From the IMG/VR virus record IMGVR_UViG_3300044821_000131, positions 140,258-204,257 of that record: DNA of 64,000 bases, one strand, 5' to 3'. Below the pieces are notes generated by a model. That model searched no databases. It was not told the origin of the DNA and saw only the letters and a program-made list of their open reading frames with translations. Shown piece after piece: positions 21,483 to 63,025 of the stretch (the first letter of the stretch is position 1; each line of letters begins with the position of its first letter). The position numbers and the translations under genes were made by a program.

Positions 21483-22129
21483 GATACGCAATTCCAGGTT
21501 TTCAGACGCCGGATCATCCCAAGCATGACACTCGGGTATTCGCGAAGGCTGACGGCACGGTACATTTCATGTTCATGGATGATCGTCCGCTGGATGAAAA
21601 ATTGCCGCCGTTTTTGATTTTCATCAGCATCGAACATGGACGGGAAATTGAATTGCAGGCGTTCACACAATCCACACGTTTCGTATATCAAAGAAAACAC
21701 GAGGACCGAGCCAGCAAGTCTTACTGGTTTAAACTTCGCACTGATGAGTTGATAATTCTTCCGGGTACCTATCAAGTTCGGTTTGTAGTAAAAGGTGACG
21801 AGTGGGTGAAAAAGTCATTGACCGTACGCAATCACCCGGCGTTGCCTCGCAACCCAAAACCCGGAGTAGGTGTCGGCCATCGCATGGTGTTAAGTTTCGG
21901 TGACCCGAAAGTGGTGGTAGTTCAAGGTGACATGCGGCATCAAGCTGACAACCTGCCGAAGCCTAACAATTTTGCCTACAACATGGGTACTACCTATTTC
22001 GGTAGTCCGCCTCCGAATGACTATCAGACGGGCAGTGTGGGTGACGCCTATATTCAGATTATTGGAAATGAGTTTATAGCCGAGTGGATAAAGGTTTCAG
22101 GTTATGACACAAATACAGGCTGGGAGTAA
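21479..22129 (+). CDS. Hypothetical protein, fibre module
   Basis: ATGA coupling at 21479; C-terminal [19 protein letters not shown]...[13 protein letters not shown] resembles fibre shoulder motifs. Confidence 0.45.
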
Positions 22130-25100: not shown

Positions 25101-25578
25101 AGGCCCAACCGGGGCGAGTGGGGCTGCTTCCACCGTGGCTGGACCAACTGGACCTACAGGTCCGACAGGCGCGTCAGGAGCAGCGAGTACTGTAGCGGGT
25201 CCGACAGGTCCGACAGGCCCAACGGGCGCTTCTGGTGCTGCAAGTACGGTTGCCGGACCAACCGGCCCTACGGGACCAACAGGTGCTTCTGGTGCTGCTT
25301 CAACAGTTGCTGGCCCTACCGGTCCGACAGGCCCAACGGGCGCTTCTGGTGCTGCAAGTACCGTGGCTGGCCCTACCGGGCCGACAGGTGCGTCAGGAGC
25401 AGCGAGTACTGTGGCGGGTCCGACAGGCCCAACTGGGCCGACAGGTGCGTCAGGAGCAGCAAGTACTGTTGCTGGACCAACTGGTCCTACCGGACCTACC
25501 GGTGCAACAGGGCCGACCGGCCCCGGCGGCGGCGCATCTTCAAACTCAATGGCATATCCTTGGTTTTTAGACTTATGA
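22129..25578 (+). CDS. Collagen-like tail fibre 1 (interrupted GPT repeats plus three copies of an 82-aa domain)
   Basis: Repeating [19 protein letters not shown] units; three copies of [19 protein letters not shown]...ADWNINL. Confidence 0.85.
23437..24954 (+). repeat. Three 246-nt direct repeats (23437-23682, 24121-24366, 24709-24954) separated by 57-nt-unit collagen arrays
   Basis: Near-identical DNA and protein copies seen directly. Confidence 0.9.
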
Positions 25579-28500: not shown

Positions 28501-29006
28501 CATTTCCGTTTTTTGTGACGGAAGCCGCAGAGTTTTGGACAACCGTGTTCATGGATCAGTCAAACGCTGGAACCTCGCAAATGCGTGTAGCGGTATATGA
28601 TGATGTGGGCGGTGGAAATGGGCCGCTGGGTTACCCTAGTTGCGTTCTCATCGACACAGGAGTCGTGGCCATGAACGGTTCGGCGTCGGTAACAAATATA
28701 GCCCCGGCTGGAATAGCTCGAACGATCTATCCGGGACTGAACTGGCTGGTAATCAAATGCGACGTGTTGGGTACAGCATCCACGTTTTACACCATGTTCG
28801 GCACTTCTCTACAATTACCGGGATGGAACGGAGCACACTTGGGCACATCCACAAACTTTCTTCAGCCCATAGCCTACAAGGTAACGGGCGTGGCCGCGGG
28901 TGCATTTCCGGGCGTGTTCCCGACTGGCGGATTACTTGTTGGTTGTAACGTGGGCGCAACTGGCCAGTTTGCTCCCGTTGTAGGCGTAACCCGGACTATT
29001 CAATAA
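25575..29006 (+). CDS. Collagen-like tail fibre 2 with SGNH/GDSL esterase domain
   Basis: ATGA coupling at 25575; short GPT collagen; two TLP-type repeats; SGNH blocks [17 protein letters not shown] and [11 protein letters not shown]. Confidence 0.75.
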
Positions 29007-33310: not shown

Positions 33311-34372
33311 ATGGATTTTGTAAAAGACTGCTCTGGCCGACATTTGCTTCGGATCAACAACTTGGTGACCGTACCGGAATACGTCAAACAAGCCTCGATC
33401 CCAGACGACGGCCTCGGTGATCTGCCCGAACACTTGTTCGCAGATCCTGTCCGTCGTGAGTTTCCCATTGACAGCGCCGGTCATACGTATCTCAGTCAGG
33501 CTTACTGTATGTCTGCCGGAATCGATAGCAAGTCAATTCTAGGAAACATCAAATCGGCCATGTCCCGCTTTCCCGAGGTGCCGGCGGATATCGCAAAACT
33601 GGAGGCGGCCATGGATGCCAGCGTCAAATCCAGTTCTGTTGGTAATCAGCCACAGTTCGCCGTTTACGTCGATTTCGGTGCCGGCAATCCGGACTCTGAA
33701 ATCGAGTACGTGAAGTCCGGCGGCGTGAAAGGTTTCTATCCCATCAATGATGTAGACCAAGTGGTGGATTCTGCCATTCAGATCGGCAACGAGTCGCATC
33801 GCATCCCACTGGAACTCTTTGTTGAAGGTTGTCAGGCGATCTACAAATCGGCCAAAGATATGGGTTGCACCGAGCAACTACCGAAGACCATTGTTCAATA
33901 CGGCGTGGAACGCGTGCCGGATTACGAGTTCGTGAAACAACAGGCTGAGATCCGAGCGCGTGAGACGAATGACCCGATTTACATCGAACTGGCAGCTTCG
34001 GCTGAAGACGACACAGAACACGACTCCAATTTGTGGTCCGAACTCTGGGGCAAGGCCGATGCGAGTCACGGCGTCAAGTATGCTCGGCACACGTTGAACC
34101 CCTATCAGATATTTCATTCCGGCATGCCCAAATCGGCCTTTGAAGCGGCTATCAATAAATGGACACTCTTGCATGGCGCCGCCATTCCGGTTCCTGCGCT
34201 GCAGGCTCTGAAAGAGGACAGCATCAGCCGTGTGATGTCGAAGGAAGCCGCGGACAAGGTGCAGGAGGTCCTGAACAAGTCAGCCTCAGTTACCGGGGCG
34301 GAATTGGCCAACGAGTTGTCAAAGCTCGATAAACCGATCCAGTTGGCACTGTTGAAACTGGTCGCCCAGTAA
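33311..34372 (+). CDS. Hypothetical protein, possibly head-associated
   Basis: 353 aa; LPEHLFADPVRREFPIDSAGHTYLS resembles the LPxSxFAxP..R.YPI motif of some phage head proteins. Confidence 0.35.
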   Translation: MDFVKDCSGRHLLRINNLVTVPEYVKQASIPDDGLGDLPEHLFADPVRREFPIDSAGHTYLSQAYCMSAGIDSKSILGNIKSAMSRFPEVPADIAKLEAAMDASVKSSSVGNQPQFAVYVDFGAGNPDSEIEYVKSGGVKGFYPINDVDQVVDSAIQIGNESHRIPLELFVEGCQAIYKSAKDMGCTEQLPKTIVQYGVERVPDYEFVKQQAEIRARETNDPIYIELAASAEDDTEHDSNLWSELWGKADASHGVKYARHTLNPYQIFHSGMPKSAFEAAINKWTLLHGAAIPVPALQALKEDSISRVMSKEAADKVQEVLNKSASVTGAELANELSKLDKPIQLALLKLVAQ

Positions 34373-34373
34373 A

Positions 34374-34979
34374 ATGGCTGTCAAACCACAGGCGTTGAAT
34401 CCCAAAGGGGTTTTCCTGGCCCTCACCGATCCGAACACCTTCGCAACGGTAATCCATATAGTGCTGATTTCCCGTTACGGCGAAGAGATTTACAACGAGG
34501 ACCCAATAGAACTCTTTCTTCGGCTGGAGGAGGACTTTGGATCGAAACCCTGTGAAGAGGTCGAGAACAAGATAAATGCCATACTGCTTGCCACCAGTAC
34601 GGATCTGTTTTACGAGGACCCGCATGCGTTCACGACCATCTGCCAGACGCTCACAACCGGAGACCCGGGAATTGACATGCTGGACCCGCTTACCTTGCCC
34701 GAGGTGATGTGGGGCGTGTACGAAGTAGAGTTGAACCATGGCTCGGGCAAAATGTCCAAACATGTGGAAAAGGTTATTCAGCAGGTCGTCGAGGAAGAGT
34801 CAAACGAGGTGGATCACGAGGCCATGTTGAACGAGGATCCCTACGACTACTTGATGCACTTTTTGGAGGACCAGCGGGAAGTTCTGCAACGTCAGATGGA
34901 AGCCGTAGGATTGACCGGTACCGACCTGCCGCCAGTACAGACCTTGGCCGACCCCAAGACCCATCCTGCCCTGCAATAG
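34374..34979 (+). CDS. Acidic hypothetical protein
   Basis: 201 aa ORF coupled to the previous gene. Confidence 0.5.
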   Translation: MAVKPQALNPKGVFLALTDPNTFATVIHIVLISRYGEEIYNEDPIELFLRLEEDFGSKPCEEVENKINAILLATSTDLFYEDPHAFTTICQTLTTGDPGIDMLDPLTLPEVMWGVYEVELNHGSGKMSKHVEKVIQQVVEEESNEVDHEAMLNEDPYDYLMHFLEDQREVLQRQMEAVGLTGTDLPPVQTLADPKTHPALQ

Positions 34980-35028
34980 AGCGGTATTCTGTGTTATAAG
35001 TATTTGAACAGGATATGTTTAGATATTG

Positions 35029-35125
35029 ACCTATTTGCCCTATTTTAACCTAGGGCAATTGGGTTAGTTCTTTGAGTGCTGCTGTCGGGTACGACTGACG
35101 GCAGCACTCAAGGAGTTACTTCCTT
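35029..35125 (+). other. Cluster of intergenic inverted repeats/hairpins
   Basis: ttgcccta/tagggcaa; 15-bp stem 35072-35086/35097-35111 with one G-U pair; aagga/tcctt. Confidence 0.6.
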
Positions 35126-35191
35126 GTCAACAAACCAACAAAACAAAAACAACGGCAACCGCGCGGCCGACAACAGTGCGATAGAAAACCT

Positions 35192-35398
35192 ATGGCTAAA
35201 GCTCAACAATCAAAATCGAGTAATCGTGCAACTGGCAAACACATAGTGAAGCAGGCGACTTCACCGCACTGGGTTGAACCCTGCAAATTACCCTCGTTAG
35301 CCGAAGACCTGTCAACACGGGTTTCGCTGTTCGAGTATGTAGTCGCCAACGTTCAAAACAGCTGCACATTAACCGGAATAGCAGGGTACAGCGAATAA
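35192..35398 (+). CDS. Small hypothetical protein
   Basis: 68 aa ORF following an A/C-rich leader. Confidence 0.4.
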   Translation: MAKAQQSKSSNRATGKHIVKQATSPHWVEPCKLPSLAEDLSTRVSLFEYVVANVQNSCTLTGIAGYSE

Positions 35399-35404
35399 AA
35401 TACT

Positions 35405-36010
35405 ATGCGAACAATAACCGCGGTCGTTCCCATTTCCGGAGTTCCCAAGAATGGGGTGTTCTCAGTCGAAGGCGCGGAGAGACTTAAAAATGGTCTCGTG
35501 CATATATTGATTGACGTGGGACCTACTCCGGAAGCTTGGAGAACTTGGAAAGTGAATGCCACAGTGTCAATCGCTTCACGGCTCTTGACACTACGTGCAC
35601 CAGCTACCATCAACGACATACTGTTTGAGATCTGGTCGGACGATTTGGTCAAAGCCGACGTCGGCGTCACTATCGAAGTTGAGGACTCAGTTTTCAACAA
35701 TCTGCAAAAACGGCTGGCCGTTGAAAGCAAAGTGCCAGACTGGGTGATCGGGTACTTGAATGCGTCCTTTCGTTTCAACGAGAATCCTTTAAGGTTCTTA
35801 CGCAAGATATTCGGTGGTGTATGGAAGTTCGAACACGGCAAGGACCAGGGACACTTCTCGTCGGTGTATTGGAATGATGTGAAAATTTGGTCCGGGCTTA
35901 CGAACTCGGCCGTCGTTCCGATAACGACGTCTACGATTGAGTCCGACAAGACCATGCGACGAATCGAATACACCAGCATGGGTCCGACTTTGGTTGATAA
36001 TAACCGCTGA
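35405..36010 (+). CDS. Hypothetical protein
   Basis: 201 aa ORF. Confidence 0.55.
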   Translation: MRTITAVVPISGVPKNGVFSVEGAERLKNGLVHILIDVGPTPEAWRTWKVNATVSIASRLLTLRAPATINDILFEIWSDDLVKADVGVTIEVEDSVFNNLQKRLAVESKVPDWVIGYLNASFRFNENPLRFLRKIFGGVWKFEHGKDQGHFSSVYWNDVKIWSGLTNSAVVPITTSTIESDKTMRRIEYTSMGPTLVDNNR

Positions 36011-36044
36011 CATCGGATCGGACAGTTAAGATCAAACTTACAAC

Positions 36045-36078
36045 CGGCAGGAGGCTTACAACCTCCTGCCGAACTTTT
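36045..36078 (+). terminator. Candidate intrinsic terminator
   Basis: Perfect 10-bp GC-rich stem cggcaggagg/cctcctgccg with a 7-nt loop, followed by aactttt. Confidence 0.6.
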
Positions 36079-36175
36079 AATTAAATGCCGAGCAGACTGG
36101 TTCTGGTTCGGCCGAGCTTCTACGCAAAGAATTTCAAATTTTTTATCTATTGGGTCTTCCAACTGAAAGGGATAC

Positions 36176-36457
36176 ATGAAGTTGACCAGAAAGCAACTCA
36201 ACAAAATTCTAAAGCACACAGACATGTTTACAGTCGATGGCATAATGCACTTGGCTACATACAAGTACATACCGAAGGACAGTTATGACCGGGCACTTGT
36301 AGGATCGCCAATAATGCCAACTCAGCGCTCTCACAACGAGAGCTTTGCTCTACGGTTATTACTTGACGCGTACGTCGTAGCAGAGAACACACTGGACGTG
36401 TGCGGAACTAAAATCAAATTTTTCACATGGCAAGAATTATCATTAGCACCAAGTTAA
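36176..36457 (+). CDS. Hypothetical protein
   Basis: 93 aa ORF. Confidence 0.5.
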   Translation: MKLTRKQLNKILKHTDMFTVDGIMHLATYKYIPKDSYDRALVGSPIMPTQRSHNESFALRLLLDAYVVAENTLDVCGTKIKFFTWQELSLAPS

Positions 36458-47142: not shown

Positions 47143-47626
47143 GAAACCAACCATTACTTCGGTGATAGATCCATTGTGTGAATGCGACAATTGTGGGCAT
47201 CGCTGTGGTTGTAGCAAGCTGGCTCAAATTCACAATCTGTTGGATCGACTCGACGTGGGTGGGGAGATGCCGGCAGGTGATTGTCCCAAGTGCGGATGTT
47301 TCAGTTATTTGGTCAAGCCAGAGGTTGTTGTTAGCTTCACACGTCAAGCTGGAGAAGATATTAAAAAACTTGATGGCTGCGTTACCCACTATACCAAAGA
47401 TCTTCGTGGTCTCTTGGAAGAACAGCTGGTAAAGGAGATCAATAAAAATCCTATCTTGGCACGAATGAACAAGATGCCGAGATGCTCCAGCGCAATCGAT
47501 AGATTTGGTACCTACAAAACGACGGTGGTGTTCGAAACGGACTTAGATTGGATCACCATGCAGCAAGTGCTGCAGTGGACTTATGACACATTTGGCATGA
47601 CCGGGTCGTTTGAAAAATATGAGTGA
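47135..47626 (+). CDS. Hypothetical protein with Cys clusters
   Basis: CECDNCGHRC and CPKC. Confidence 0.5.
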   Translation: MSKKPTITSVIDPLCECDNCGHRCGCSKLAQIHNLLDRLDVGGEMPAGDCPKCGCFSYLVKPEVVVSFTRQAGEDIKKLDGCVTHYTKDLRGLLEEQLVKEINKNPILARMNKMPRCSSAIDRFGTYKTTVVFETDLDWITMQQVLQWTYDTFGMTGSFEKYE

Positions 47627-49653: not shown

Positions 49654-52248
49654 ATGATAATCGAAAAACTAATTGGTGACAACTGGGGTAAACACCGGCA
49701 CTTCGAATTTGAGAGCAACGGAAGCATCGTCGGTGTCGTCGGACCAAACGGGTCTGGCAAATCAACCGTACTGGACCTGGTCGAATTCCTGATAACCGGG
49801 CAGACCCGTGATAATCTGGATTCGTATGTCCGCAATCAGCAAGGCAACGGCGGCGGCTCCATGACCTTCGTGAAGAACGGTCAACGGGGAACCATCATGC
49901 GCCAGATCGGCTCCACCAAGAAGCGCGAACTCGTTTGGGGCGATCAGACGTTGAAGTCAGTCAAAGACGTGGACAAGCTGATGTCGGAAATATTCGGTGC
50001 TGATAAAAAGGCCTTGGCTAACTCGGTGTTCGTAAATCAAGGCACACTGCAAGATATCCTTTTTAAGGACGGCGTGGATAGAAGTCGAGCGTTCCTGCAG
50101 TTGGTCAATTTATCCTTCTGCGAGGCCCGGTCGCACATGGTGAATAGCCAGATCCAAATGATTTCTGGCACTGTGGTGGATCTAACCCCAGCACGGGATG
50201 AGGCGTCTGCTGCTCGTATGGACGCCTTGGGAACCATGAATCGCAAAAACATGGAGCTGTTGGCCTGCCCGAATCATGAGGCCGAGTTGACATACCTGCA
50301 CAATCTGTCCAAGGCCAACACGGAGCTCAATCTGCTGCAGCAACAGATCGGTGAGGCCCTTGTACAGAAGCAGAGCAAGCAAGCCGAGTTGGAGGTCAAA
50401 CTGGCAGGGGCCACGTTGGACCAACGTATTGCGGAGCTGGAGGAGACGCGACAGAATTTAGAGTCGGATAGGACCAAGTCCGACGATTATGGAAAAATCT
50501 TGGCTGAGTTAACGCATTACACCAGAGTGAGAACTGAGATTGATTGCATCACCCGACGCCAGATACAGGTAATGTCTGACTTGAGTTATGTTAATGCGGA
50601 TAGCTATACGGTGCAGCAGATCGAAGGTTTCATCAAAGACCTGAATGATGACATCAAGCTGCACGACAATCGGAAATCCATAACGGAAACGATCGCAGGC
50701 ATCGAATCCAACTTGACGCACTTGCACAATCAGTTGGGAATATTTCCGGTGCCTCCGGCGAGTCAAGATCAGCTGAATAAAGTGCAGCACGATTTGCAGT
50801 TGAAACGATCGTCGGTATCACAACTGTCACAGTACACAAGACTACAGGCCAAGATCAAAGGTCGGGTGAGTGCGAAGTCCGAATGTACCGGTGATTGTCC
50901 GGAATGTGGTCTCACCCTGATGGATATAAATCAATTAAACGATGAGTATCTTCAAGGTAAGACGGCAGAGATCGAGCTTTTGACTTCCGAGATAAAGGTT
51001 CTTGAGAAGCAACAGTCGGACTGGCTATCCGCATTGGCAGAATATAACCGAAAGAAAAATAATCTTGAAGGAAGCATCGAAAGTCAGAAACAGGCGAAGT
51101 TGAGAGAGCAGCAACGTCTGGCTGACATCAAGACAAAGTTTGACTACGAGGTGGCGAAAGAAGACGTACGAGCTTGGTCTGACATCCGGGAAAAGACAAA
51201 GGAACTTTTAACTGAGCAGAGCAATCTGGATACCCAGAAAGCGACGGCTATAAAATTACTGGACACGTTCCCATTGGGAGCGTCTAACTGGGAACGACGT
51301 TACGAATTTTCCGCCGCGGGACACAGTGATCTGTCCAGCCGCACCACCCACTGGTCCAATCTGTACAATCAGCGCAATCAGCAGTTGAGTCTGTCCAACA
51401 ACTTGGCCAGCCAAATCGAAACCATAACCCATAGTCTGGCCCAGATGCAAACGCGAGTCACCGAGGCGTCGGCGATCTTTAACGCCCCGGCGCCTGGTGT
51501 ACTGTCAGAGAAGTTGCAAGATACTAGTGTGTCCATGACCCAGGTGGAATCTGAACTGTCAGCCGCGGAGCACCACCGTATAAGTCTAAAGGGAGAAGTG
51601 AAAACAGCCGTAGAGGCATATCAGGCGGCCAATGTTCGCTTTCAAGACTTGGAACAACGAATTGCCCAGAACCGAGCAAAGCTAGACCTGTTAAATGATC
51701 TGCGGCGGTTAAAAGACCTGCTGGGTAACGACGGCATACCCATGATGTTTGTGCGGCACAAGTTTGAGAAGTTGGCGCAGCATACACAGGATGGGTTGCA
51801 GCAGATGAATGCGAACTTCTATATATTCATTGACAAGGATAAGGATTTGGAGTTCCTATTCCATCGTCTGGATGAGCCGACGAAGTTCGACCTGCCGATG
51901 TGCAAGTTGTCAGGCGGTCAACGCGTTCGCCTGTGCTTGGCATTTCTGATGGCTTTGCAGAAGACGCTGATCAAAGACATAGGTCTTCTGGTGTTGGATG
52001 AGCCGCTAGGCGGATTGGACATAAATGGTGTGGAACAAGTTATTGAATTTCTGAGTTTGATGAAACAGGAATTGAAGAATGCCGAACATCAAATCTGGAT
52101 CGTGGACCACAATTTCGCGATCGAGCAAGCATTGGAAAAAGAATTGAAATTAGGACAAGAACAAAATAATCATGAACAAGAAAACGCAGATCCAGCAGAA
52201 CAAGAAGTTGTCGCCGAAAGAATTGATCACGTTCATACGGAAGCCTGA
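49654..52248 (+). CDS. Rad50/SbcC-like SMC ATPase
   Basis: GPNGSGKST Walker A, VNQG Q-loop, coiled coils with central CPEC zinc hook, LSGGQ signature, LVLDEP Walker B, IVDH. Confidence 0.93.
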   Translation: MIIEKLIGDNWGKHRHFEFESNGSIVGVVGPNGSGKSTVLDLVEFLITGQTRDNLDSYVRNQQGNGGGSMTFVKNGQRGTIMRQIGSTKKRELVWGDQTLKSVKDVDKLMSEIFGADKKALANSVFVNQGTLQDILFKDGVDRSRAFLQLVNLSFCEARSHMVNSQIQMISGTVVDLTPARDEASAARMDALGTMNRKNMELLACPNHEAELTYLHNLSKANTELNLLQQQIGEALVQKQSKQAELEVKLAGATLDQRIAELEETRQNLESDRTKSDDYGKILAELTHYTRVRTEIDCITRRQIQVMSDLSYVNADSYTVQQIEGFIKDLNDDIKLHDNRKSITETIAGIESNLTHLHNQLGIFPVPPASQDQLNKVQHDLQLKRSSVSQLSQYTRLQAKIKGRVSAKSECTGDCPECGLTLMDINQLNDEYLQGKTAEIELLTSEIKVLEKQQSDWLSALAEYNRKKNNLEGSIESQKQAKLREQQRLADIKTKFDYEVAKEDVRAWSDIREKTKELLTEQSNLDTQKATAIKLLDTFPLGASNWERRYEFSAAGHSDLSSRTTHWSNLYNQRNQQLSLSNNLASQIETITHSLAQMQTRVTEASAIFNAPAPGVLSEKLQDTSVSMTQVESELSAAEHHRISLKGEVKTAVEAYQAANVRFQDLEQRIAQNRAKLDLLNDLRRLKDLLGNDGIPMMFVRHKFEKLAQHTQDGLQQMNANFYIFIDKDKDLEFLFHRLDEPTKFDLPMCKLSGGQRVRLCLAFLMALQKTLIKDIGLLVLDEPLGGLDINGVEQVIEFLSLMKQELKNAEHQIWIVDHNFAIEQALEKELKLGQEQNNHEQENADPAEQEVVAERIDHVHTEA

Positions 52249-57328: not shown

Positions 57329-57695
57329 AGAGTGTAATGTCCAACTGGACAAGCAGTATATCAATACCGCCGCAGTGCGCAGAAAATTGTTGTTGTTATC
57401 GAAAGAGAAACGTGCCGGCAAATTCAAGCGGGTAAGCGAACAGACGCTGCAGAACGTCAACACGGAAGTTCGTTTAATCGTCGAGCGGATACTTAGAGAA
57501 TACAAACCCGAACACTACAAGACCCAATTGATCAACCGATCAGTAATCAAGGCTTTGTTGGAGGAACGCGCCACGGACAATAGCGTTCCGAAGTTCAAGG
57601 TCACACCGGGAATGTTGGTTAACATTGACAAGCAGCTTCACACATATCTCGACGGTGTAGTTCATCGTCAACCCAGTGTTGGAAAAACGTTATGA
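57318..57695 (+). CDS. Tandem (doublet) histone-fold-like protein
   Basis: Two ~56-aa internal repeats: INTAAVRRKL..RVS..long helix..PEHYKT and INRSVIKAL..KVT..long helix..PSVGKT; basic composition. Confidence 0.6.
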   Translation: MATEECNVQLDKQYINTAAVRRKLLLLSKEKRAGKFKRVSEQTLQNVNTEVRLIVERILREYKPEHYKTQLINRSVIKALLEERATDNSVPKFKVTPGMLVNIDKQLHTYLDGVVHRQPSVGKTL

Positions 57696-58042
57696 GCGAA
57701 AACAAACCGTTGGTTTATCTGGCTGTACCTTATTCCCATCCCGATCCGAGTGTCAGGCAATGGCGTTTCGAACGTGTAAATTTGGCGGCGGCGAAATTGA
57801 TGCGCCAAGGCCTGAATATATTTTCACCCATCAGCCATACACATCCGATATCTGAGGCTGGGGATCTGCCGAAAGGTTGGGAATTCTGGGAGGCGTTTGA
57901 TCGGGCATATCTTACCTGTTGCAACAAATTGATCGTGCTCAAACTGGCCGGATGGCAAGAGAGCGTCGGAGTGACCAGCGAAATCGACATTGCCCGGGAG
58001 CTTGGCATCCCGGTGGAGTTTATCGAAGATGAACAAGGATGA
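57692..58042 (+). CDS. DUF1937 / nucleoside 2-deoxyribosyltransferase-like protein
   Basis: VYLAVPYSHPD, FSPISHTHPI, W..SVGVTSEIDIARELGIPV. Confidence 0.8.
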   Translation: MSENKPLVYLAVPYSHPDPSVRQWRFERVNLAAAKLMRQGLNIFSPISHTHPISEAGDLPKGWEFWEAFDRAYLTCCNKLIVLKLAGWQESVGVTSEIDIARELGIPVEFIEDEQG

Positions 58043-58223
58043 ATTACTTCTGGTGACCGATCTTTATTGGGAAGCCCGAGATGCTTACGTGCCCCAAAGC
58101 GGTGATCATAAACACTTAAAGGAAGCGCTACTAGGTGTGTTGGATTTGATCTACCGCGAGGGCGCTATGGACGCGAACACTAGAGATAAAGAGTATAAAT
58201 CATTAAACGAATATTATGACTGA
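58029..58223 (+). CDS. Hypothetical protein
   Basis: Small coupled ORF. Confidence 0.4.
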   Translation: MNKDELLLVTDLYWEARDAYVPQSGDHKHLKEALLGVLDLIYREGAMDANTRDKEYKSLNEYYD

Positions 58224-58662
58224 TGCAAAATTAAAAGAGCGAACGCCCTTGTCTTGGAAAGCCGTTCGTAGAGGTGATATTTATTGTGCGCCTGCCTGCG
58301 GTCGCGGATGCACTTGGAAGGAATACACCAGAGCCACAATCGAAGCCAAGGCCATAATTACCGCGATGAAGACTAAGGGGTGGCGTGCCGAAGTTACTGA
58401 GAACCTCGGATGGTATTGGTGCTTAACTAACGACTTTTGTGGCATATCGCTTCATGTACACGAACACTACGGGGTGCCTAAATATTGGTGTCTGATGGCG
58501 GGTGGAGACGTGACAAATGCCACAAGCGGCAGTTATGATTTCCATTCAGACAAAAGCTTTCGGGATCCGAATCGAGCTGTGGCGCATCAGATCAAAATAG
58601 CCACAAGGTTTTTCGAATCGCACGATCGAGCGCGTAAAAACATGTTGTCGATCTTGCCATGA
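58216..58662 (+). CDS. Hypothetical protein
   Basis: YCAPACGRGC; 148 aa. Confidence 0.55.
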   Translation: MTDAKLKERTPLSWKAVRRGDIYCAPACGRGCTWKEYTRATIEAKAIITAMKTKGWRAEVTENLGWYWCLTNDFCGISLHVHEHYGVPKYWCLMAGGDVTNATSGSYDFHSDKSFRDPNRAVAHQIKIATRFFESHDRARKNMLSILP

Positions 58663-59393
58663 GCCGGCTGAGCGTCTTGGTGGCCTGTGAAGAGAGCGGA
58701 ACGGTGCGGGACGCATTTATCGCCCGCGGCCACAATGCTTGGTCCTGTGACTTAAAGCCGTCACTGACGCCAGGACCACATCTGAAAAGTGACGTGGTGC
58801 GCTGGCTAACAGGACAGCCTAGACTTGTTTCAACACTGAAGCCAGTGCCATGGGACCTGCTTATCTGCCACCCTCCGTGCACGTATCTGTGCGGATCGGG
58901 CATGCATTGGACCACCCGCGGTCTGAGAGATCCAAAATTGACGTCCGACGCTATCGAGTTTGCTGAGACTTTGTGGAATTGCGGCATCGAAAAAATATGT
59001 CTGGAGAATCCGGTAGGCGTCCTCAGCACCCGGAGCAATCTGGGTAAGCCGTCCCAGATCATTCAACCTTACGAGTTCGGCGAAGATGCCAGCAAAAAGA
59101 CATGCCTGTGGCTGAAGAATCTTCCGATCTTGGAGTCAACCGAATATTTTGAGCCGAGGATGGTCTGCAAAGCTTGCGGTGGTCATAATGGCTATGCTGC
59201 GGCCTCCCGAGACGGATGTAGACATTGCGGAGCAGAAGCTGCGTTTTTAAGACCCAGGTGGTCCAATCAGACTGACAGCGGACAGAATAAACTTGGACCT
59301 TCGGCCAATCGAGCGGCAGCTCGAGCGCAGACCTATCGGGGAATAGCAAGAGCTATGGCGGAGCAGTGGTCGGAAGATTTAAAGAAAGTGTAG
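58659..59393 (+). CDS. Phage DNA cytosine-5 methyltransferase-like protein
   Basis: VLVACEESGTVRDAF, SCDL, DLLICHPPCTYL (catalytic PC), LENPVG, KKTCLWL. Confidence 0.75.
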   Translation: MSRLSVLVACEESGTVRDAFIARGHNAWSCDLKPSLTPGPHLKSDVVRWLTGQPRLVSTLKPVPWDLLICHPPCTYLCGSGMHWTTRGLRDPKLTSDAIEFAETLWNCGIEKICLENPVGVLSTRSNLGKPSQIIQPYEFGEDASKKTCLWLKNLPILESTEYFEPRMVCKACGGHNGYAAASRDGCRHCGAEAAFLRPRWSNQTDSGQNKLGPSANRAAARAQTYRGIARAMAEQWSEDLKKV

Positions 59394-59403
59394 AATAAAA
59401 TAA

Positions 59404-59432
59404 TTGACACAAAACAGCATCAGGATTAGTGT
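59404..59432 (+). promoter_or_regulatory. Sigma-70-type promoter for the helicase gene
   Basis: TTGACA-17 bp-TAGTGT with an A/T-rich upstream tract. Confidence 0.65.
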
Positions 59433-59440
59433 CAAAACTG

Positions 59441-59571
59441 TCCGGCGAAAATGTGGAGTAAACAGAAGCAGATCCAATCACGATTTTGGTCATCGTGCGA
59501 CGCTGCCTTGCCTCTGTCTTGCCACCTTTCGCCGGGGGATGATCTAGGATCCGCAGCCAACACGATGACCA
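59441..59571 (+). ncRNA. Candidate structured 5' leader with alternative folds
   Basis: Stem 59442-59450/59527-59535; apical hairpin 59479-59497; perfect 11-nt alternative partner at 59561-59571. Confidence 0.45.
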
Positions 59572-59583
59572 TTTTATTTTTGT

Positions 59584-61104
59584 ATGGGTAGTATTACACA
59601 AGACTTTAGACGGGCACCGTTGCCTCCAGATGCGTCCGAAGTACGAAAAGACCACACCGGTATAGAGCGGGAAATCTTCTTCGGCGCCGTAGCCTCCTAC
59701 AATTTTTACAAACTTGTCCGCAATAACGTTTGCCCATACGACGCAGAAAAAAGGACATGCCGACCCGATTTTAGCATCGAGCGCTATAACATCGCGTGGG
59801 CCTTCATTGTCGCGTACTGGCAACGTTTTGAGAATATAACACTTCAGCGCGATCTAAGCATTCCCACCGAGACGCTGTGTGCCTTCGTTATTGATTGTGC
59901 CAACCGTTCCGGCTTGGTCGTGGACGTAGCCAAACAGATCACCGACGAAATCGTCGAAGAAGTCGGCTACACGGCAAATCTTACCTACGAGTCCCTGAAA
60001 GCTCTGGCCGAGAGCTCCGCGTTCAACGAGTGGCTGGAGTCCAGGCTATTGTCGCAGGTTACGGGCACCATTGCGGCGCAGAAGAACTTGGGCTATCTGA
60101 CCATGGACACGTTGGAGGAAGCCGTGGCGAAGGCCCGGAGGGCCATTACACCGGTAAAGAATGACTATTTCGTCAACGGAGCCAACTTCCTCTTCGGTAA
60201 ACGGAAAATACGTCCCAGCGTTCCCATAACGGCATTCCCAAATCTGTCCCGCGCGCTGGGCGGCGGCCTGTTCTGGGGAGAAGCCACAATGGTAGCCGGA
60301 ATCAATGCCGGAGGAAAAACGATAGTTACCATGCAGCTTGCTCGAGACTTTGCCTATCAAAGTATTAATACTGTGGTATTTACTACAGAGCGTAAACCGG
60401 AGGAATTGTTTGTTCGTTCTGTGAGTGAGTTATTGAATGTGGATATAGGCCGTCTCATGACGGTTCCGGCAACGGTGAATCAGGAAGTGGAGATAAATTA
60501 CATTCCAGATTGGGTGTGGTCCCACCCGGGAGATGCTGCGCGCTTGGAGCGAATGTACGATGTCTACAGTCAGCATTTACTGTTCATTGATTGGAGTAAG
60601 GGTCAAGGCGCTACCATAAGCGAGAGTTTTGAACAGGTTATGCAGCAGATAGAACAAACCGGATGGATGCCACAAATAGTGATATTCGACTGGATAGGTG
60701 GAGGATTAGACGTTATCGAGAATAAGGACTGGCTTCGGATGTATTACCAGTCGGCCGCAGACTGCCTGATCAATCATAGCAAACGCACGAACCGACATGT
60801 GATCATGACGGCACAATTGAACAAGGAGAAGGTCAAGCCTAGTACTAACTTTGTGGATATGAGCATGTTATCGGAATGTTTGACGATGACTAACAACTTG
60901 ACCAATTTTATTGGTATTACGGCTAAGCGGGATCAGAATCTGAAACCGGGGGCTGCGACGGTGCAGAAGTTTCAGAATCTGTGTGCGGCCAAAGCGACGC
61001 ACGGGCCAGGTGGCATCATACCGGTGGAGGCACAGTTCAATGTACAAAGGTTTATGGAACGTAACGATGCGGCTGAGAAGATGTTGAAGACTGGGGGTGG
61101 TTAA
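59584..61104 (+). CDS. DnaB-like replicative helicase
   Basis: GEATMVAGINAGGKT Walker A, VVFTTE, VIFDWIG Walker B, MTAQLNK. Confidence 0.88.
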   Translation: MGSITQDFRRAPLPPDASEVRKDHTGIEREIFFGAVASYNFYKLVRNNVCPYDAEKRTCRPDFSIERYNIAWAFIVAYWQRFENITLQRDLSIPTETLCAFVIDCANRSGLVVDVAKQITDEIVEEVGYTANLTYESLKALAESSAFNEWLESRLLSQVTGTIAAQKNLGYLTMDTLEEAVAKARRAITPVKNDYFVNGANFLFGKRKIRPSVPITAFPNLSRALGGGLFWGEATMVAGINAGGKTIVTMQLARDFAYQSINTVVFTTERKPEELFVRSVSELLNVDIGRLMTVPATVNQEVEINYIPDWVWSHPGDAARLERMYDVYSQHLLFIDWSKGQGATISESFEQVMQQIEQTGWMPQIVIFDWIGGGLDVIENKDWLRMYYQSAADCLINHSKRTNRHVIMTAQLNKEKVKPSTNFVDMSMLSECLTMTNNLTNFIGITAKRDQNLKPGAATVQKFQNLCAAKATHGPGGIIPVEAQFNVQRFMERNDAAEKMLKTGGG

Positions 61105-61109
61105 AGAGG

Positions 61110-61141
61110 ACAGGCGCCACGGTGGGGGACCGGGCGCCTGT
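61110..61141 (+). terminator. GC-rich hairpin after the helicase gene, lacking a U-tract
   Basis: acaggcgcc-a-cggt/accg-ggcgcctgt stem with a 5-nt G loop. Confidence 0.4.
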
Positions 61142-61333
61142 GTCGAACGTTAGTTTGAGGACCAAAGGCGCGTCAAAATATTCGGTTATGTCAGACCGAA
61201 CTGGCGAGCACCAACAGTGTCAACGAGTCGCAAACCGGATTCGTGAACAAAATGATGACTAGCGCCATTCTGTCGCGTCAGTGTGAATATGTCGCTAGTG
61301 CGACAATTTGTCAACAGGAATTTAATACGAACG

Positions 61334-61380
61334 ATTTTTCGAAAAATAATTTGACAATGAAAATGAAGATGTCATAGTGA
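61334..61380 (+). promoter_or_regulatory. Perfect 14-bp palindrome plus sigma-70-type promoter
   Basis: atttttcgaaaaat (61334-61347) just upstream of TTGACA (61351), then TG-n-CATAGT / TAGTGA as -10. Confidence 0.6.
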
Positions 61381-61384
61381 TCTC

Positions 61385-61477
61385 GCTTTAGTAAAGTGAC
61401 AACATGAATTTTGTGCCGCCCTGTTGCGTGTAACACTTCTATGTTGTTGCGTTACTAAAGCCCGCAACAGGCGGCGC
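61385..61477 (+). ncRNA. Candidate structured 5' leader with alternative or pseudoknot pairing
   Basis: ~21-bp stem 61385-61405/61441-61461; loop segment 61413-61428 complementary to 61463-61477. Confidence 0.5.
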
Positions 61478-61519
61478 CCTTCTTCAATAAGGTCCACGCC
61501 GTCTTAATTTAATACAATT

Positions 61520-63025
61520 ATGATCGCCGCAATTCAAGACTTCGAGTCGACGCCCGCAACATGTCGCCAGCCAGACAAGGCTCTGCAACTGCCCCAATAT
61601 ATCATGCACGCGACCTTGCAGAGATGCTGTGACCTCCAAGGCCAAGCCACGACACAGGCATTGCACATCAGCTGCCATATCCAAGCATTCAGTAACATTG
61701 CCATACACGAGGTGGCGAAGTATGCCTGGGACCGGCGGCGCGCGGTGCGGGGGCATGGCCAACAGATGAAGCCGCGTCCGGATCGTAAGTACAGATTCAA
61801 ATTGTCCGGGGACGAAATGGCGGTCTATCGCTTCCTGATCAACGTCCATAAGCCGGACAGCCGGAACCACCTCAAGTTTCACAAGCGCTTCAATGTGTAT
61901 GGAAGTTTGGACATGACGTCGGAAGAAATTGCCCGGTATATAAAACTGGAAGTGTATTCTGTTCGCCGGGCCTTGGTGAAACTGGACGCCCTTTGGCTGC
62001 TGGATCGTGTCTTAATTGCGCTAAAGGCGGAGGATGGCCACTATGTGGGCAGCAAGACATTGCTGCATCTGAGGCTGGATCGCCACCTGCAAATGTTTCA
62101 TGAAATTAAGAAGAACCGGGGGGTAGTTACCCCCGAAGAGGATGAGCAAAATCAGGCAGCAAATATGCCGGTTTTTGATGCATCTGGAGATGATAATAAT
62201 GTCAGTTGTAATAATGATATTATGGACCCCTCCTCTTCTCGTTTGGATTCAATCGTCAAGAGTTCTGGGTCCGAAGAGGAAAAAGACAGCGCGGCGCCGC
62301 TGTGCGGCGACCCAAATCTTTTTCCAGAGGGAGTTTTGAAAATAGGGGATGCGACGTTCCAGAAGTTTACAAAGGCCATTGATGACGCATTTCCCGGGCA
62401 ACTCGAAACCCCGGAACAATTGAATCGACTTCGTTACTTGATCCTTCGGACTTCACCTAAAGACCGCATGCAATACGAGGATCTCTGTGCAGTGTTGGAA
62501 TACAACATGGCCAGTTCGGTGAAGAATCTTTTGGATTACTGGTGGGTCATTCTGCACGATCTTCGGGTTGAACAGCTTTCCGCCAAGGACGGTTACGACG
62601 CGGATCGTTATCTTAAAAATTGGAGCGCTGAGGCGTCGGAAGTTAATTTCATCGAGTCGATGAAGGACGCGGTGCAGTTTATCGCCTATCGTAGAATCTT
62701 GGAACCCGGATTAAAAACATACGACGCCGTTTTGGACAGTTACGGAAATCCATTTGGTGCCTTGGCCGCTTGTCTCGAATTGGGTTTGCACAAGAAAATC
62801 GATTACGCTTTTACTGACGAACGGCGTTTTAACCTGCTTATGGACTGGATCAAGGATCCCAGTCATGACTTCGAGTCGCTCATGTTTCGTCAGCATTATC
62901 CTTGGATAATGGAGCGTTTGGGTTTGCCGGAGGCGGATTGGAACACCAAGAAACGGCGGGTACGCAAGGCTTATGAACGGATGCTGAATCTTCGGGCACA
63001 TGCGTCGATATGGCCAAAAAATTAA
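61520..63025 (+). CDS. Putative replication initiator with winged HTH
   Basis: MTSEEIARYIKLEVYSVRRALVKLDALWLL HTH followed by an acidic linker; adjacent to the DnaB-like gene. Confidence 0.5.
   Translation: MIAAIQDFESTPATCRQPDKALQLPQYIMHATLQRCCDLQGQATTQALHISCHIQAFSNIAIHEVAKYAWDRRRAVRGHGQQMKPRPDRKYRFKLSGDEMAVYRFLINVHKPDSRNHLKFHKRFNVYGSLDMTSEEIARYIKLEVYSVRRALVKLDALWLLDRVLIALKAEDGHYVGSKTLLHLRLDRHLQMFHEIKKNRGVVTPEEDEQNQAANMPVFDASGDDNNVSCNNDIMDPSSSRLDSIVKSSGSEEEKDSAAPLCGDPNLFPEGVLKIGDATFQKFTKAIDDAFPGQLETPEQLNRLRYLILRTSPKDRMQYEDLCAVLEYNMASSVKNLLDYWWVILHDLRVEQLSAKDGYDADRYLKNWSAEASEVNFIESMKDAVQFIAYRRILEPGLKTYDAVLDSYGNPFGALAACLELGLHKKIDYAFTDERRFNLLMDWIKDPSHDFESLMFRQHYPWIMERLGLPEADWNTKKRRVRKAYERMLNLRAHASIWPKN

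What the first reader, a model, noticed from the sequence alone, without database searches (positions are those of the whole stretch)
59404..59591. Switch-like leader RNA upstream of the DnaB-like helicase
Seen: a promoter TTGACA-17-TAGTGT puts the transcription start near 59439-59441. The transcript can fold a long basal stem (ccggcgaaa 59442-59450 with tttcgccgg 59527-59535, continued by gtgg/ccac, acaga/tctgt and gcag/ctgc) topped by the hairpin cacgat/atcgtg (59479-59497). The segment 59487-59497 (tggtcatcgtg) is also perfectly complementary to 59561-59571 (cacgatgacca), extended by gctgc/gcagc. This partner ends 12 nt before the ATG. Inference: two mutually exclusive folds control helicase translation, with the loop acting as a toehold, as in antisense or pseudoknot replication control of IncI/IncF plasmids.
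Basis: partly seen in the sequence, partly recalled or inferred. Interest (0 to 1): 0.65.

Follow-up and report, generated by a model that had tools for sequence, protein, structure and literature searches.

The report
Conserved terminator-switch leader before phage helicase
The 190 bases in front of a jumbo phage's replicative helicase gene hold a promoter and an RNA leader with two competing folds, one of which looks like a transcription stop signal; one distant relative keeps the same design, so it is probably a real but ordinary kind of gene switch whose trigger is unknown.

Summary
The window is the last 64 kb of a 204-kb phage genome from a peat metagenome.

The whole leader folds no better than shuffled sequence (z about -1). 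The two sub-folds, cut at their own ends, do (z -3.1 and -3.9).

One relative, L050 (helicase 59% identical), carries a homologous leader. It keeps:
- TTGACA-17-TAGTGT around a diverged spacer;
- the basal stem, the apical hairpin and the long-range stem, with one both-sided compensatory change each in the basal and long-range stems;
- an identical ACCAUUUUAUUUUU after the long-range stem.

That U-tract lies 12 nt before the AUG here and 35 nt before it in L050. It therefore belongs to the stem, as in this phage's own terminators (perfect 11-13-bp stems followed by UUUU).

In both sequences fold A is the best structure of every growing transcript until the last bases of fold B's 3' arm emerge.

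Best reading: a promoter-proximal terminator/antiterminator attenuator with an unknown signal. Translational, IncI/IncF-like control is not favoured:
- predicted start-site accessibility is the same in both folds;
- the upstream ORF is absent from L050;
- no antisense promoter was found.

There are no RNA data, only two sequences and no Rfam match.

The parts
59394..59403 (+). A-rich stretch AATAAAATAA just upstream of the -35 hexamer (UP-element-like)
   Evidence: L050 has AATAAAAAAC at a similar position, separated from the -35 by 3 extra bases. The function is inferred.
59404..59409 (+). -35 hexamer TTGACA
   Evidence: It is identical in L050 at 2313-2318. TTGACA occurs 10 times in the sense-oriented upstream intergenic DNA of this genome against 2.6 expected. 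TTGACA or TTGACC also lies within 260 nt upstream of the helicase in L003, L005, L006/L007, L008 and L054.
59427..59432 (+). -10 hexamer TAGTGT, 17 nt after the -35
   Evidence: L050 has TAGTGT at 2336-2341 after a 17-nt spacer of different sequence. The block GG-TTAGTGTC is kept at 10 of 11 positions. It is below the threshold of the consensus scan.
59439..59441 (+). Predicted transcription start
   Evidence: Inferred from the usual distance of about 7 nt after the -10 hexamer. No RNA data exist.
59442..59450 (+). Helix A1, 5' arm (CCGGCGAAA); pairs with 59527-59535
   Evidence: Perfect 9 bp (I3). All 9 pairs are kept in L050, with one G-C to A-U change on both sides and one C-G to U-G change.
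59453..59471 (+). 5' strands of the inner fold-A helices (GUGG 59453-56, ACAGA 59462-66, GCAG 59468-71)
   Evidence: Minimum-free-energy fold of 59442-59535. L050 instead has one 7-bp helix, GCGCGAA/UUCGCGC, nested at the same place.
59479..59497 (+). Hairpin P1 (CACGAU / loop UUUGGUC / AUCGUG), proposed antiterminator. Its loop and 3' arm form the 5' arm of B1.
   Evidence: The block CGAUUUUGGUC is identical in L050. The four shared pairs are kept, with one U-A to U-G change.
59487..59497 (+). Helix B1, 5' arm (UGGUCAUCGUG); pairs with 59561-59571
   Evidence: Perfect 11 bp (I1). Nine pairs are kept in L050, with one A-U to G-C change on both sides. It is part of the RNAalifold consensus structure.
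59502..59506 (+). Helix B2, 5' arm (GCUGC); pairs with GCAGC 59553-59557
   Evidence: L050 has CUGU/ACAG and GCGU/ACGC at the equivalent place.
59503..59525 (+). 3' strands of the inner fold-A helices (CUGC 59503-06 or UUGC 59508-11, UCUGU 59513-17, CCAC 59522-25)
   Evidence: These bases overlap the interior of fold B, so the inner helices of A and B exclude each other.
59527..59535 (+). Helix A1, 3' arm (UUUCGCCGG). In fold B it sits in and next to the apical loop.
59553..59557 (+). Helix B2, 3' arm (GCAGC)
59561..59571 (+). Helix B1, 3' arm (CACGAUGACCA)
59572..59582 (+). U-tract UUUUAUUUUUG directly after B1; proposed termination site
   Evidence: ACCAUUUUAUUUUU is identical in L050 (and a 20-nt hit at 95% identity). 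Five other perfect intergenic stems of 11-13 bp in this genome are followed by UUUU.
59584..61104 (+). DnaB-like replicative helicase gene (506 aa), the gene served by the leader
   Evidence: Pfam DnaB_C, E = 2.5e-6. PHROG 19, DnaB-like replicative helicase, E = 1.6e-13. The start MGSITQ is kept in L050.

Best explanation
The spacer is a cis-acting transcription attenuator for the helicase gene.

A sigma-70-type promoter (TTGACA-17-TAGTGT) starts an RNA at about 59439-59441. Transcription first produces fold A, a long hairpin (59442-59535) topped by P1. P1 holds the 5' arm of the second structure.

Once the last bases of the 3' arm (59561-59571) have been made, the more stable fold B can form. 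Fold B is an 85-nt rod closed by an 11-bp perfect stem. It is followed directly by UUUUAUUUUU, which is the anatomy of an intrinsic terminator.

If B forms in time, transcription stops about 2-10 nt before the helicase AUG and leaves a leader RNA of roughly 135-145 nt. If A persists, RNA polymerase reads into the helicase gene.

What is shown:
- the motifs;
- their conservation and compensatory changes in one relative;
- the order of folding in silico;
- the likeness to the phage's own terminators.

What is inferred:
- the transcription start;
- that fold B terminates;
- that the balance between A and B is regulated. The signal is unknown.
For: 1. Homologous leader in L050 (helicase 59% identical). 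Promoter hexamers and spacing are kept, CGAUUUUGGUC is kept and ACCAUUUUAUUUUU is identical, while the rest has diverged with indels of 14, 6 and 1 nt.
2. All A1, P1 and B1 pairs that have letters in both sequences are paired in both (100% of cells). A1 and B1 each carry one change on both sides. Partners slid by 1-3 columns give 10-70% paired.
3. Fold B has z = -3.9 here and z = -4.3 in L050. It is also the RNAalifold consensus.
4. The U-tract stays with the stem, not with the AUG: 12 nt against 35 nt from stem to AUG.
5. This phage's other perfect intergenic stems of 11-13 bp are followed by UUUU and sit 2-40 nt before the next start codon.
6. In both sequences fold A is the minimum-free-energy structure of every prefix, from its completion until 3-4 nt before the end of the B 3' arm. 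B then takes over. The direct-path barrier is about 30-34 kcal/mol.
7. The genes upstream of the leader differ: a DNA methyltransferase here and unrelated small ORFs in L050. The leader therefore travels with the helicase gene.
Against: - There are no RNA data, so neither the start, the 3' end nor any regulation has been observed.
- Only two sequences exist, so each helix rests on one compensatory change. The shuffle control has no power at this depth.
- Fold B is not a textbook terminator. The 'loop' between the B1 arms is 63 nt, and the terminator scan does not call it.
- Fold A is weaker in L050 (z = -1.6 to -2.0).
- At equilibrium fold A is rare: about 1% here and about 0.002% in L050.
- A1 and B1 cross without sharing bases, so they could coexist as a pseudoknot instead of alternating.
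- No sensor is identified. There is no Rfam match and no conserved leader peptide.
- Eleven other helicase relatives lack the element.
Confidence: 0.45

Rival explanations
1. The two folds, or a loop-to-distal-site pseudoknot, gate translation of the helicase, as in antisense and pseudoknot control of Rep proteins of IncI/IncB/IncF plasmids.
For: - The P1 loop UGGUC is complementary to GACCA 59567-71, which is a possible toehold.
- Here the 3' partner ends 12 nt before the AUG.
- The upstream ORF 59451-59591 stops at 59589-91, overlapping the helicase start. That is a coupling-like layout.
- In the full-length minimum-free-energy fold, the freed 5' arm pairs weakly with UAUUUUUGU.AUGGG.
Against: - Predicted accessibility of the start region is nearly equal in folds A and B.
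- In L050 the stem ends 35 nt before the AUG and a separate AU-rich start region follows it.
- L050's leader contains no ATG, so the upstream ORF is not conserved. Other reading frames are broken by indels of 14, 6 and 1 nt.
- No promoter-like site lies on the minus strand.
- This phage uses no Shine-Dalgarno sites that a fold could mask (14% SD-like).
Confidence: 0.12
2. A free-standing small RNA gene. Promoter, a structured RNA of about 135-145 nt (fold B, possibly with A1 as a pseudoknot) and its own terminator make up the gene. The RNA acts in trans, and the helicase is expressed only by read-through or from upstream transcripts.
For: - Promoter, stable rod and U-tract are the three conserved blocks.
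- At equilibrium fold B holds 73-80% of the ensemble.
- A1 and B1 are topologically compatible.
Against: - No target-like complementarity elsewhere in the genome exceeds 12-13 nt chance matches.
- The element is always glued to the helicase start while the upstream genes differ.
- The conserved 5' arm of P1 (CGAU) has no role in a fold-B-only RNA.
- The helicase would lack a promoter of its own.
Confidence: 0.15
3. An RNA stability or processing element. Fold A is a 5'-terminal hairpin that protects the helicase mRNA from 5'-end-dependent decay. Alternatively, the long imperfect rods are RNase III-type processing sites like those between T7 early genes.
For: - Fold A starts 2-3 nt after the predicted start here, and about 5 nt after it in L050.
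- Two other TTGACA promoters of this genome are also followed at once by stable hairpins: window 61385-61461 (z = -4.2 for 61378-61530), and a 9-bp hairpin after the promoter at genome position 114852.
Against: - This does not explain the conserved U-tract directly after B1.
- It does not explain why a second fold that excludes the first is conserved.
- No data on RNA ends exist.
Confidence: 0.1
4. A DNA-level element. The inverted and direct repeats are protein-binding sites (operators or origin repeats) next to the helicase gene, or the promoter primes replication as at T4 and T7 origins.
For: - CACGAT occurs three times.
- There is an 11-nt tandem pair, CTGCCTTGCC/CTGTCTTGCC (D2).
- The location is inside a replication module.
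- A/T-rich runs lie at both ends (I4).
Against: - The compensatory changes keep pairing, not sequence.
- The tandem pair is not kept in L050.
- Spacings differ between the two leaders.
- No repeat family is shared with other parts of the genome.
Confidence: 0.05
5. There is no specific function: a promoter followed by an untranslated spacer whose pairings are accidental.
For: - The whole-leader z-scores are only -1.0 to -1.5.
- At least 40 other places in the genome fold as stably.
- Most helicase relatives do without the element.
Against: Blocks of 11-20 identical bases, and paired changes, survive between genomes whose helicase genes are only about 63% identical at the DNA level.
Confidence: 0.06

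Closest known systems
Terminator/antiterminator attenuators in bacterial 5' leaders (expression platforms of riboswitches and T-boxes; trp, pyr and bgl-type leaders)
   Same: - A promoter-proximal leader.
- A hairpin followed by a U-tract just before the regulated gene.
- An upstream segment (P1 5' arm CACGAU) that competes for the 5' arm of that hairpin.
- The competing fold forms first during transcription.
   Different: - No recognisable sensor: no Rfam aptamer, no conserved leader peptide and no known protein-binding motif.
- The terminator stem encloses a structured insert of 60-63 nt instead of a small loop.
- It is known from two phage genomes only.
Lambda PR'-6S RNA-tR' unit and Q antitermination (from my own knowledge)
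   Same: A constitutive-looking promoter is followed within about 150-200 nt by a terminator placed before the genes to be switched on. The default product would be a short leader RNA.
   Different: Lambda Q acts through a DNA site at the promoter and needs no alternative RNA fold. No Q-like gene or site was looked for or found here. The gene controlled here is a replication gene, not a late gene.
Satellite phage P4 immunity: CI RNA with seqA and seqC upstream of the alpha primase-helicase gene (from my own knowledge)
   Same: RNA-RNA pairing between a middle segment and two flanking repeats of the same sequence. Here CACGAU at 59479 and at 59561 are both complementary to AUCGUG at 59492. The pairing is tied to premature termination ahead of a replication helicase gene.
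   Different: In P4 the pairing RNA is processed and acts in trans on new transcripts. Nothing here shows processing or trans action. There is no sequence similarity.
   Same: A hairpin loop is complementary to a distal site upstream of the start codon of a replication gene. In the window, an upstream ORF ends on top of that start codon.
   Different: - The upstream ORF is absent from L050.
- The distance from the distal site to the AUG is not kept (12 nt against 35 nt).
- There is no start-site-masking stem.
- There is no antisense promoter.
- The distal site is followed by a terminator-type U-tract.

Membership tests
Sigma-70-type promoter | -35 and -10 hexamers at 16-18 nt spacing, with A at position 2 and T at position 6 of the -10 | tested here: met
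   TTGACA (6 of 6), a 17-nt spacer and TAGTGT (3 of 6, with the key A and T present). The same hexamers and spacing occur in L050 around a diverged spacer. The site is below the scan's threshold of 4 of 6 per hexamer.
Sigma-70-type promoter | Transcripts start 5-9 nt after the -10 hexamer | not testable with these tools
   No RNA run holds this sequence. Only DNA contigs could be laid on it.
Intrinsic (Rho-independent) terminator | A stable stem followed directly by a U-rich tract | tested here: met
   An 11-bp perfect stem ends at 59571 and UUUUAUUUUU begins at 59572. L050 has the same layout with a 9-bp stem. It resembles five other stem-plus-UUUU sites in the genome.
Intrinsic (Rho-independent) terminator | A compact hairpin with a loop of a few nucleotides | tested here: not met
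   63 nt lie between the B1 arms; the corresponding gap in L050 is 60 nt (coordinates). The scan, which allows loops of 3-8 nt, does not call it. The insert folds into a rod with inner helices.
Intrinsic (Rho-independent) terminator | RNA 3' ends map in the U-tract | not testable with these tools
   No RNA data exist.
Terminator/antiterminator attenuator | An alternative helix that uses bases of the terminator's 5' arm | tested here: met
   P1 (59479-84 with 59492-97) shares 59492-97 with B1. The inner helices of fold A share 59503-25 with the inner helices of fold B.
Terminator/antiterminator attenuator | Both alternatives are conserved, with covariation | tested here: inconclusive
   100% of cells are paired in both sequences. 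There is one both-sided change in A1 and one in B1, and a one-sided change in P1. With only two sequences the shuffle control has no power.
Terminator/antiterminator attenuator | An identifiable sensor (aptamer, leader peptide, or a protein- or tRNA-binding site) | tested here: not met
   Rfam gives no match, even at E up to 10. The upstream ORF 59451-59591 has no counterpart in L050.
IncI/IncB-type Rep translational control | A leader peptide ORF translationally coupled to the replication gene | tested here: not met
   Such an ORF is present only in the window (59451-59591). L050's leader contains no ATG, and indels break all reading frames.
IncI/IncB-type Rep translational control | A stem that masks the start site, relieved by a pseudoknot next to it | tested here: not met
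   The AUG unpaired probability is 0.50 in fold A and 0.46 in fold B. The distal site lies 12 nt from the AUG here and 35 nt from it in L050.
IncI/IncB-type Rep translational control | An antisense RNA with its own promoter opposite the target loop | tested here: inconclusive
   No promoter-like site lies on the minus strand of 58500-60500. By eye there is only a -10-like TAAAAT with no -35 partner. No strand-specific RNA data exist.
Any curated RNA family (Rfam 15) | A match to a covariance model | tested here: not met
   No matches at gathering score in the whole window. No matches at E up to 10 in 59350-59650.

The most novel reading that the evidence does not exclude
The leader is a new class of ligand- or protein-sensing riboregulator that ties transcription of a phage replicative helicase to a cellular or phage signal, for example nucleotide supply or a phage antiterminator. 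Fold A, or an A1+B1 pseudoknot, would be the sensor, and the long rod terminator would be the output. A further possibility, which nothing tested here excludes, is that the terminated leader RNA also acts as a replication primer or as a trans-acting RNA.
Probability: 0.12. Interest if true: 0.75.

Novelty: new member of a known kind. Interest (0 to 1): 0.45.

Why it matters
Regulation of replication genes in uncultivated jumbo phages is almost unknown. This locus offers a compact, testable cis-element: a promoter, two competing folds and a terminator-like stem, all within 190 nt. A second natural version is available for designing compensatory mutants.

If the balance between the folds responds to a signal, the element would be a handle on how such phages time helicase expression. 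If not, it is still a clear case of a promoter-proximal terminator that sets the expression level of the gene.

It also shows that this phage and its relatives use TTGACA-type promoters and classic intrinsic terminators while using no Shine-Dalgarno sites. That combination narrows the range of possible hosts.

Tried and rejected
- **Rfam.** The whole window at gathering score, and 59350-59650 at E up to 10, gave nothing. There are no tRNA or tmRNA genes.
- **Annotated phage records.** The DNA search found only short, unrelated hits. The protein search found only helicases of 35% identity or less.
- **Expression data.** No RNA run holds the sequence. Laying the two DNA runs on 57500-62500 (5,001 letters, within the 6,000-letter limit) showed the source contig and a few fragments that do not cover the leader. 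It showed no variants in the leader.
- **Other helicase relatives.** Eleven relatives at 33-53% identity have spacers from -37 to 128 nt, plus one gap of 368 nt for which no DNA was available. None has the element. Covariance model R1, searched over 37 sources, found only the window and L050.
- **Pattern scans of public collections.**
  - The exact B1 arms gave one unrelated hit, L009.
  - The A1 arms gave 40 hits, consistent with chance matches to a short palindromic pattern; they were not inspected individually.
  - The conserved blocks gave nothing in viral contigs. They gave one chance hit inside a coding region of a Cellulophaga genome bin, L078.
  - A looser pattern gave 11 hits. Only L079 and L086 (the same sequence) have a 13-bp stem plus U-tract and a P1-like competitor. 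They lie in a different context with no helicase and no Pfam matches, and score 21.7 bits (E about 0.1) although they were pre-selected by the pattern. I treated them as unrelated.
- **Small ORFs in the leader.** Four were checked: 59451-59591 (+), 59404-59547 (+), 59432-59572 (-), and the 45-aa ORF of L006. None is similar to another, and none is conserved in frame with L050.
- **Close relatives of L050.** A search of viral contigs found none.
- **Literature.** Two searches found no description of such a leader.
- **Not run.** The large protein-representative search was not run.
Full report
**Setting.** The window is bases 140258-204257 of a 204,257-bp virus record with 61-bp direct terminal repeats. 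The only run that holds the stretch in full is a peat metagenome.
- Nearly all genes lie on the + strand.
- The finding sits in a DNA-metabolism block: an SbcC-like protein, an SF2 helicase, a DUF1937 protein and a DNA methyltransferase (58659-59393, PHROG 757). The DnaB-like helicase follows at 59584-61104 (Pfam DnaB_C 2.5e-6; PHROG 19 1.6e-13).
- The 190-nt spacer 59394-59583 is one of 42 non-coding gaps of 100 nt or more in the genome.

**The observation.**
- The promoter is TTGACA (59404-09), 17 nt, TAGTGT (59427-32). The consensus scan does not list it, because the -10 hexamer matches TATAAT at only 3 of 6 positions.
- RNAfold of 59442-59535 reproduces fold A at -33.1 kcal/mol. It contains A1 (9 bp), GUGG/CCAC, ACAGA/UCUGU, GCAG with UUGC or CUGC, and the P1 hairpin CACGAU/AUCGUG.
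- RNAfold of 59487-59571 gives fold B at -37.4 kcal/mol. It contains B1 (11 bp), B2 (GCUGC/GCAGC) and further inner pairs.

**Chance.** On this sequence alone the case is moderate.
- The whole transcript is not unusually stable: z = -1.04 for 59439-59600 and -1.5 for 59439-59583.
- Cut at their own ends, fold A has z = -3.1 and fold B has z = -3.9. Those ends were chosen after the fact.
- At least 40 other places in the genome have an 85-nt window that folds as well or better.
- Of 20 perfect inverted repeats of 11 nt or more with loops up to 120 nt, eight are intergenic. This is the only intergenic one with a long loop.

**Relatives.** The word-based protein search found helicase relatives of at most 51-53% identity.
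- Their upstream spacers are short: 76, 2, 86, 37, 128, 19, 79, -37, 17, 1 and -4 nt. One further contig has a 368-nt gap, but no DNA was available for it.
- None of the fetched loci contains the element.
- TTGACA or TTGACC does recur upstream of the helicase in several of them: L003, L005, L006/L007, L008 and L054.
- A profile-guided scan of JGI metagenome contigs then returned L050, a contig of 11.9 kb. Its helicase is 59% identical, and it is preceded by a clearly homologous leader.

**What L050 shows.**
- *Promoter.* L050 has an A-rich stretch, TTGACA at 2313-18, a 17-nt spacer of different sequence, and TAGTGT at 2336-41. The -10 block GG-TTAGTGTC is kept at 10 of 11 positions.
- *A1.* UCGGCAAAA pairs with UUUUGCCGG. 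All nine pairs are kept. The window's G-C becomes A-U (both sides changed) and one C-G becomes U-G.
- *P1.* The block CGAUUUUGGUC is identical. The four shared pairs are kept, with U-A becoming U-G.
- *B1.* UGGUCGUCG pairs with CGACGACCA. Nine pairs are kept and the window's A-U becomes G-C.
- *Slide controls.* Partners slid by 1-3 columns are only 10-70% paired. With two sequences the shuffle control has no power.
- *Inner helices.* Their sequences differ but the helices are present in both. Inside fold A the window has 4+5+4 bp and L050 has the 7-bp GCGCGAA/UUCGCGC, plus an outer UCACAG/CUGUGA. Inside fold B the window has GCUGC/GCAGC and L050 has CUGU/ACAG with GCGU/ACGC.
- *Stability in L050.* Fold B has z = -4.3 and fold A has z = -1.6 to -2.0. 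RNAalifold returns fold B as the consensus.
- *Non-coding.* The two leaders differ by indels of 14, 6 and 1 nt, so no reading frame is shared. L050's leader has no ATG, so the window's upstream ORF 59451-59591 is not conserved. The antisense ORFs agree for only five codons.
- *Linkage.* The genes upstream differ: the methyltransferase here, unrelated small ORFs in L050. The DUF1937 gene, the helicase and a GNAT-like gene are shared. The leader therefore belongs to the helicase gene.

**What the element does.** The strongest clue is the run after B1.
- ACCAUUUUAUUUUU is identical in both leaders. After it the sequences diverge. The AUG follows 2 nt after the run here. In L050 there are 21 more nt, including that leader's own AU-rich start region.
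- The U-tract therefore belongs to the stem and not to the start codon.
- Five of the phage's other seven perfect intergenic stems of 11-13 bp are followed by UUUU. They often sit 2-40 nt before the next start codon. 'Perfect stem, then UUUU' is thus this phage's terminator signature, and B1 shares it.
- The difference is the 60-63-nt structured insert between the arms.
- Prefix folding shows the same order in both sequences. Fold A is the best structure from its completion until 3-4 nt before the end of the B 3' arm. Fold B then becomes best, by about 2 kcal/mol here and about 6-7 kcal/mol in L050. The direct-path barrier is about 30-34 kcal/mol, which is an upper-bound heuristic.
- At equilibrium fold B holds 73-80% of the ensemble. 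Fold A holds about 1% here and about 0.002% in L050.
- This is the logic of a kinetically controlled attenuator. The first-formed fold keeps the terminator's 5' arm busy. The 3' arm repeats CACGAU and adds GACCA, which pairs with the P1 loop.
- Whether anything tips this balance is unknown.

**Why not translation.**
- The phage uses no Shine-Dalgarno sites: 14% of starts have an SD-like tetramer, which is below random expectation. There is no ribosome-binding site to mask.
- Predicted unpaired probability of the AUG and of the U-rich stretch is almost the same in both folds: 0.50 against 0.46, and 0.47 against 0.36.
- The weak pairing of the freed 5' arm with the start region, seen in the window's minimum-free-energy fold, has no counterpart in L050.

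**Caveats.**
- A1 and B1 cross without sharing bases and have long connecting loops. They could coexist as a pseudoknot. Strict exclusion holds only for P1 against B1 and for the inner helices.
- Fold A also looks like the 5'-terminal hairpins that follow two other TTGACA promoters of this genome. A role in stabilising the mRNA is therefore possible.
- The short terminated RNA could have a function of its own.
- With two sequences and no RNA data, none of these alternatives is excluded.

**Novelty.** There is no Rfam family, and two literature searches found no description. The kind of element, a terminator/antiterminator leader, is well known. This is a new, rare member with an unusually long terminator rod and no identified sensor.

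Noticed in passing
window 61345-61530: A second promoter-plus-structured-leader lies upstream of the 501-aa gene (61520-63025). It has AAAATAAT, then TTGACA (61351-56), 16 nt and an extended -10 TGtCATAGT. A 77-nt hairpin (61385-61461, arms 86% complementary) follows at once. Next comes a GC-rich hairpin (about 61469-61504), then an AU-rich run and the AUG. The fold of 61378-61530 has z = -4.23, far stronger than the leader under study. GUUGCG occurs twice and can pair alternately with CGCAAC.
   Followed up: partly
window 61108-61160; L050 4014-4062: A conserved hairpin lies directly after the helicase stop codon. Here ACAGGCGCC pairs with GGCGCCUGU; in L050 GAAGGCGCCA pairs with UGGCGCCUUC. 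Two lower-stem pairs changed on both sides. The 14-nt loop ACGGUGGGG(G/A)ACCG is nearly identical, and so is the 3' flank GAACG(U/C)UAGUU. No U-tract follows. DNA identity is 81% over 64 nt.
   Followed up: partly
window 61140-61410; L050 4060-4200: The helicase-downstream spacer (415 nt here, 197 nt in L050) is crowded with TGTCA/TGACA-type motifs in both orientations. Examples are CAGTGTCAAC, TTTGTCAAC, TTTGACAAT, GATGTCATAG and AGTGACAAC. They may be operators or origin repeats. A similar cluster of TGTCATA repeats lies in a 300-nt divergent spacer outside the window, at genome positions 33843-34142.
   Followed up: no
whole genome (G000); window starts listed: There is no Shine-Dalgarno usage. 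Only 14% of 265 ORF starts have an SD-like tetramer at -20 to -5. Starts that follow a gap are preceded by AT-rich sequence. Even so, TTGACA is four-fold enriched in upstream spacers (10 against 2.6 expected), and classic stem-plus-UUUU terminators are used. TAnnTTTG, the Bacteroidota-type motif, is not enriched (51 and 45 sites against about 50 expected). The host remains unknown.
   Followed up: partly
window 34980-35195: This spacer holds the most stable 85-nt window of the whole genome (-52.5 kcal/mol, starting at window position 35029), between a + strand gene (34374-34979) and a - strand ORF (35196-35369 in my ORF set; the nearest larger - strand ORF is 35353-36270). It includes an 11-bp perfect inverted repeat at 35072-35111. 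It may be a bidirectional terminator.
   Followed up: no
window 23608-23690 and 24292-24375: Two near-identical copies of about 70 nt or more (GTGACGACGGTTGACACGATTGG(G/A)GCGAC...GGTACGTTTGCAGATTGGAATATAAAT) lie 684 nt apart inside the GC-rich region 22129-29006. This points to internal repeats in a very large structural gene.
   Followed up: no
genome positions 47193-47232 and 51424-51463 (outside the window): The same terminator hairpin (ACGCGCAGTAA-tccc-TTACTGCGCGT followed by ttttgcatttt) occurs twice. Each copy lies 11 nt before the ATG of a paralogous gene (the products start MNLLYLKDSDGNW... and MLLYLKDSNGIW...). A repeated block coding ...IGN.V.IG... recurs at six places in the genome.
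   Followed up: no
proteins P0003 (657 aa) and P0011 (839 aa), relatives of the helicase: Two helicase homologues from other metagenomes are longer and carry a Hint/homing-endonuclease-associated domain (PF05203). They are intein-containing versions of this helicase.
   Followed up: no
L079 412-554 and L086 10277-10419 (minus strand): An unrelated viral contig, present in two records, has a similar layout. UGAGCAG lies upstream and competes for the 5' arm of a 13-bp stem (UGGUCUCUGCUCA/UGAGCAGAGACCA) that encloses about 70 nt and is followed by UUUUAUUUUUUUU. The whole unit is flanked by a 20-nt inverted repeat. There is no helicase nearby and the neighbouring ORFs have no Pfam match.
   Followed up: partly
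window 59404-59435: The -35 and -10 regions form a 7-bp inverted repeat (TTGACAC ... GTGTCAA, 18 nt apart; I2). L050 keeps only the GACA/TGTC core, so a palindromic operator is not supported there.
   Followed up: partly
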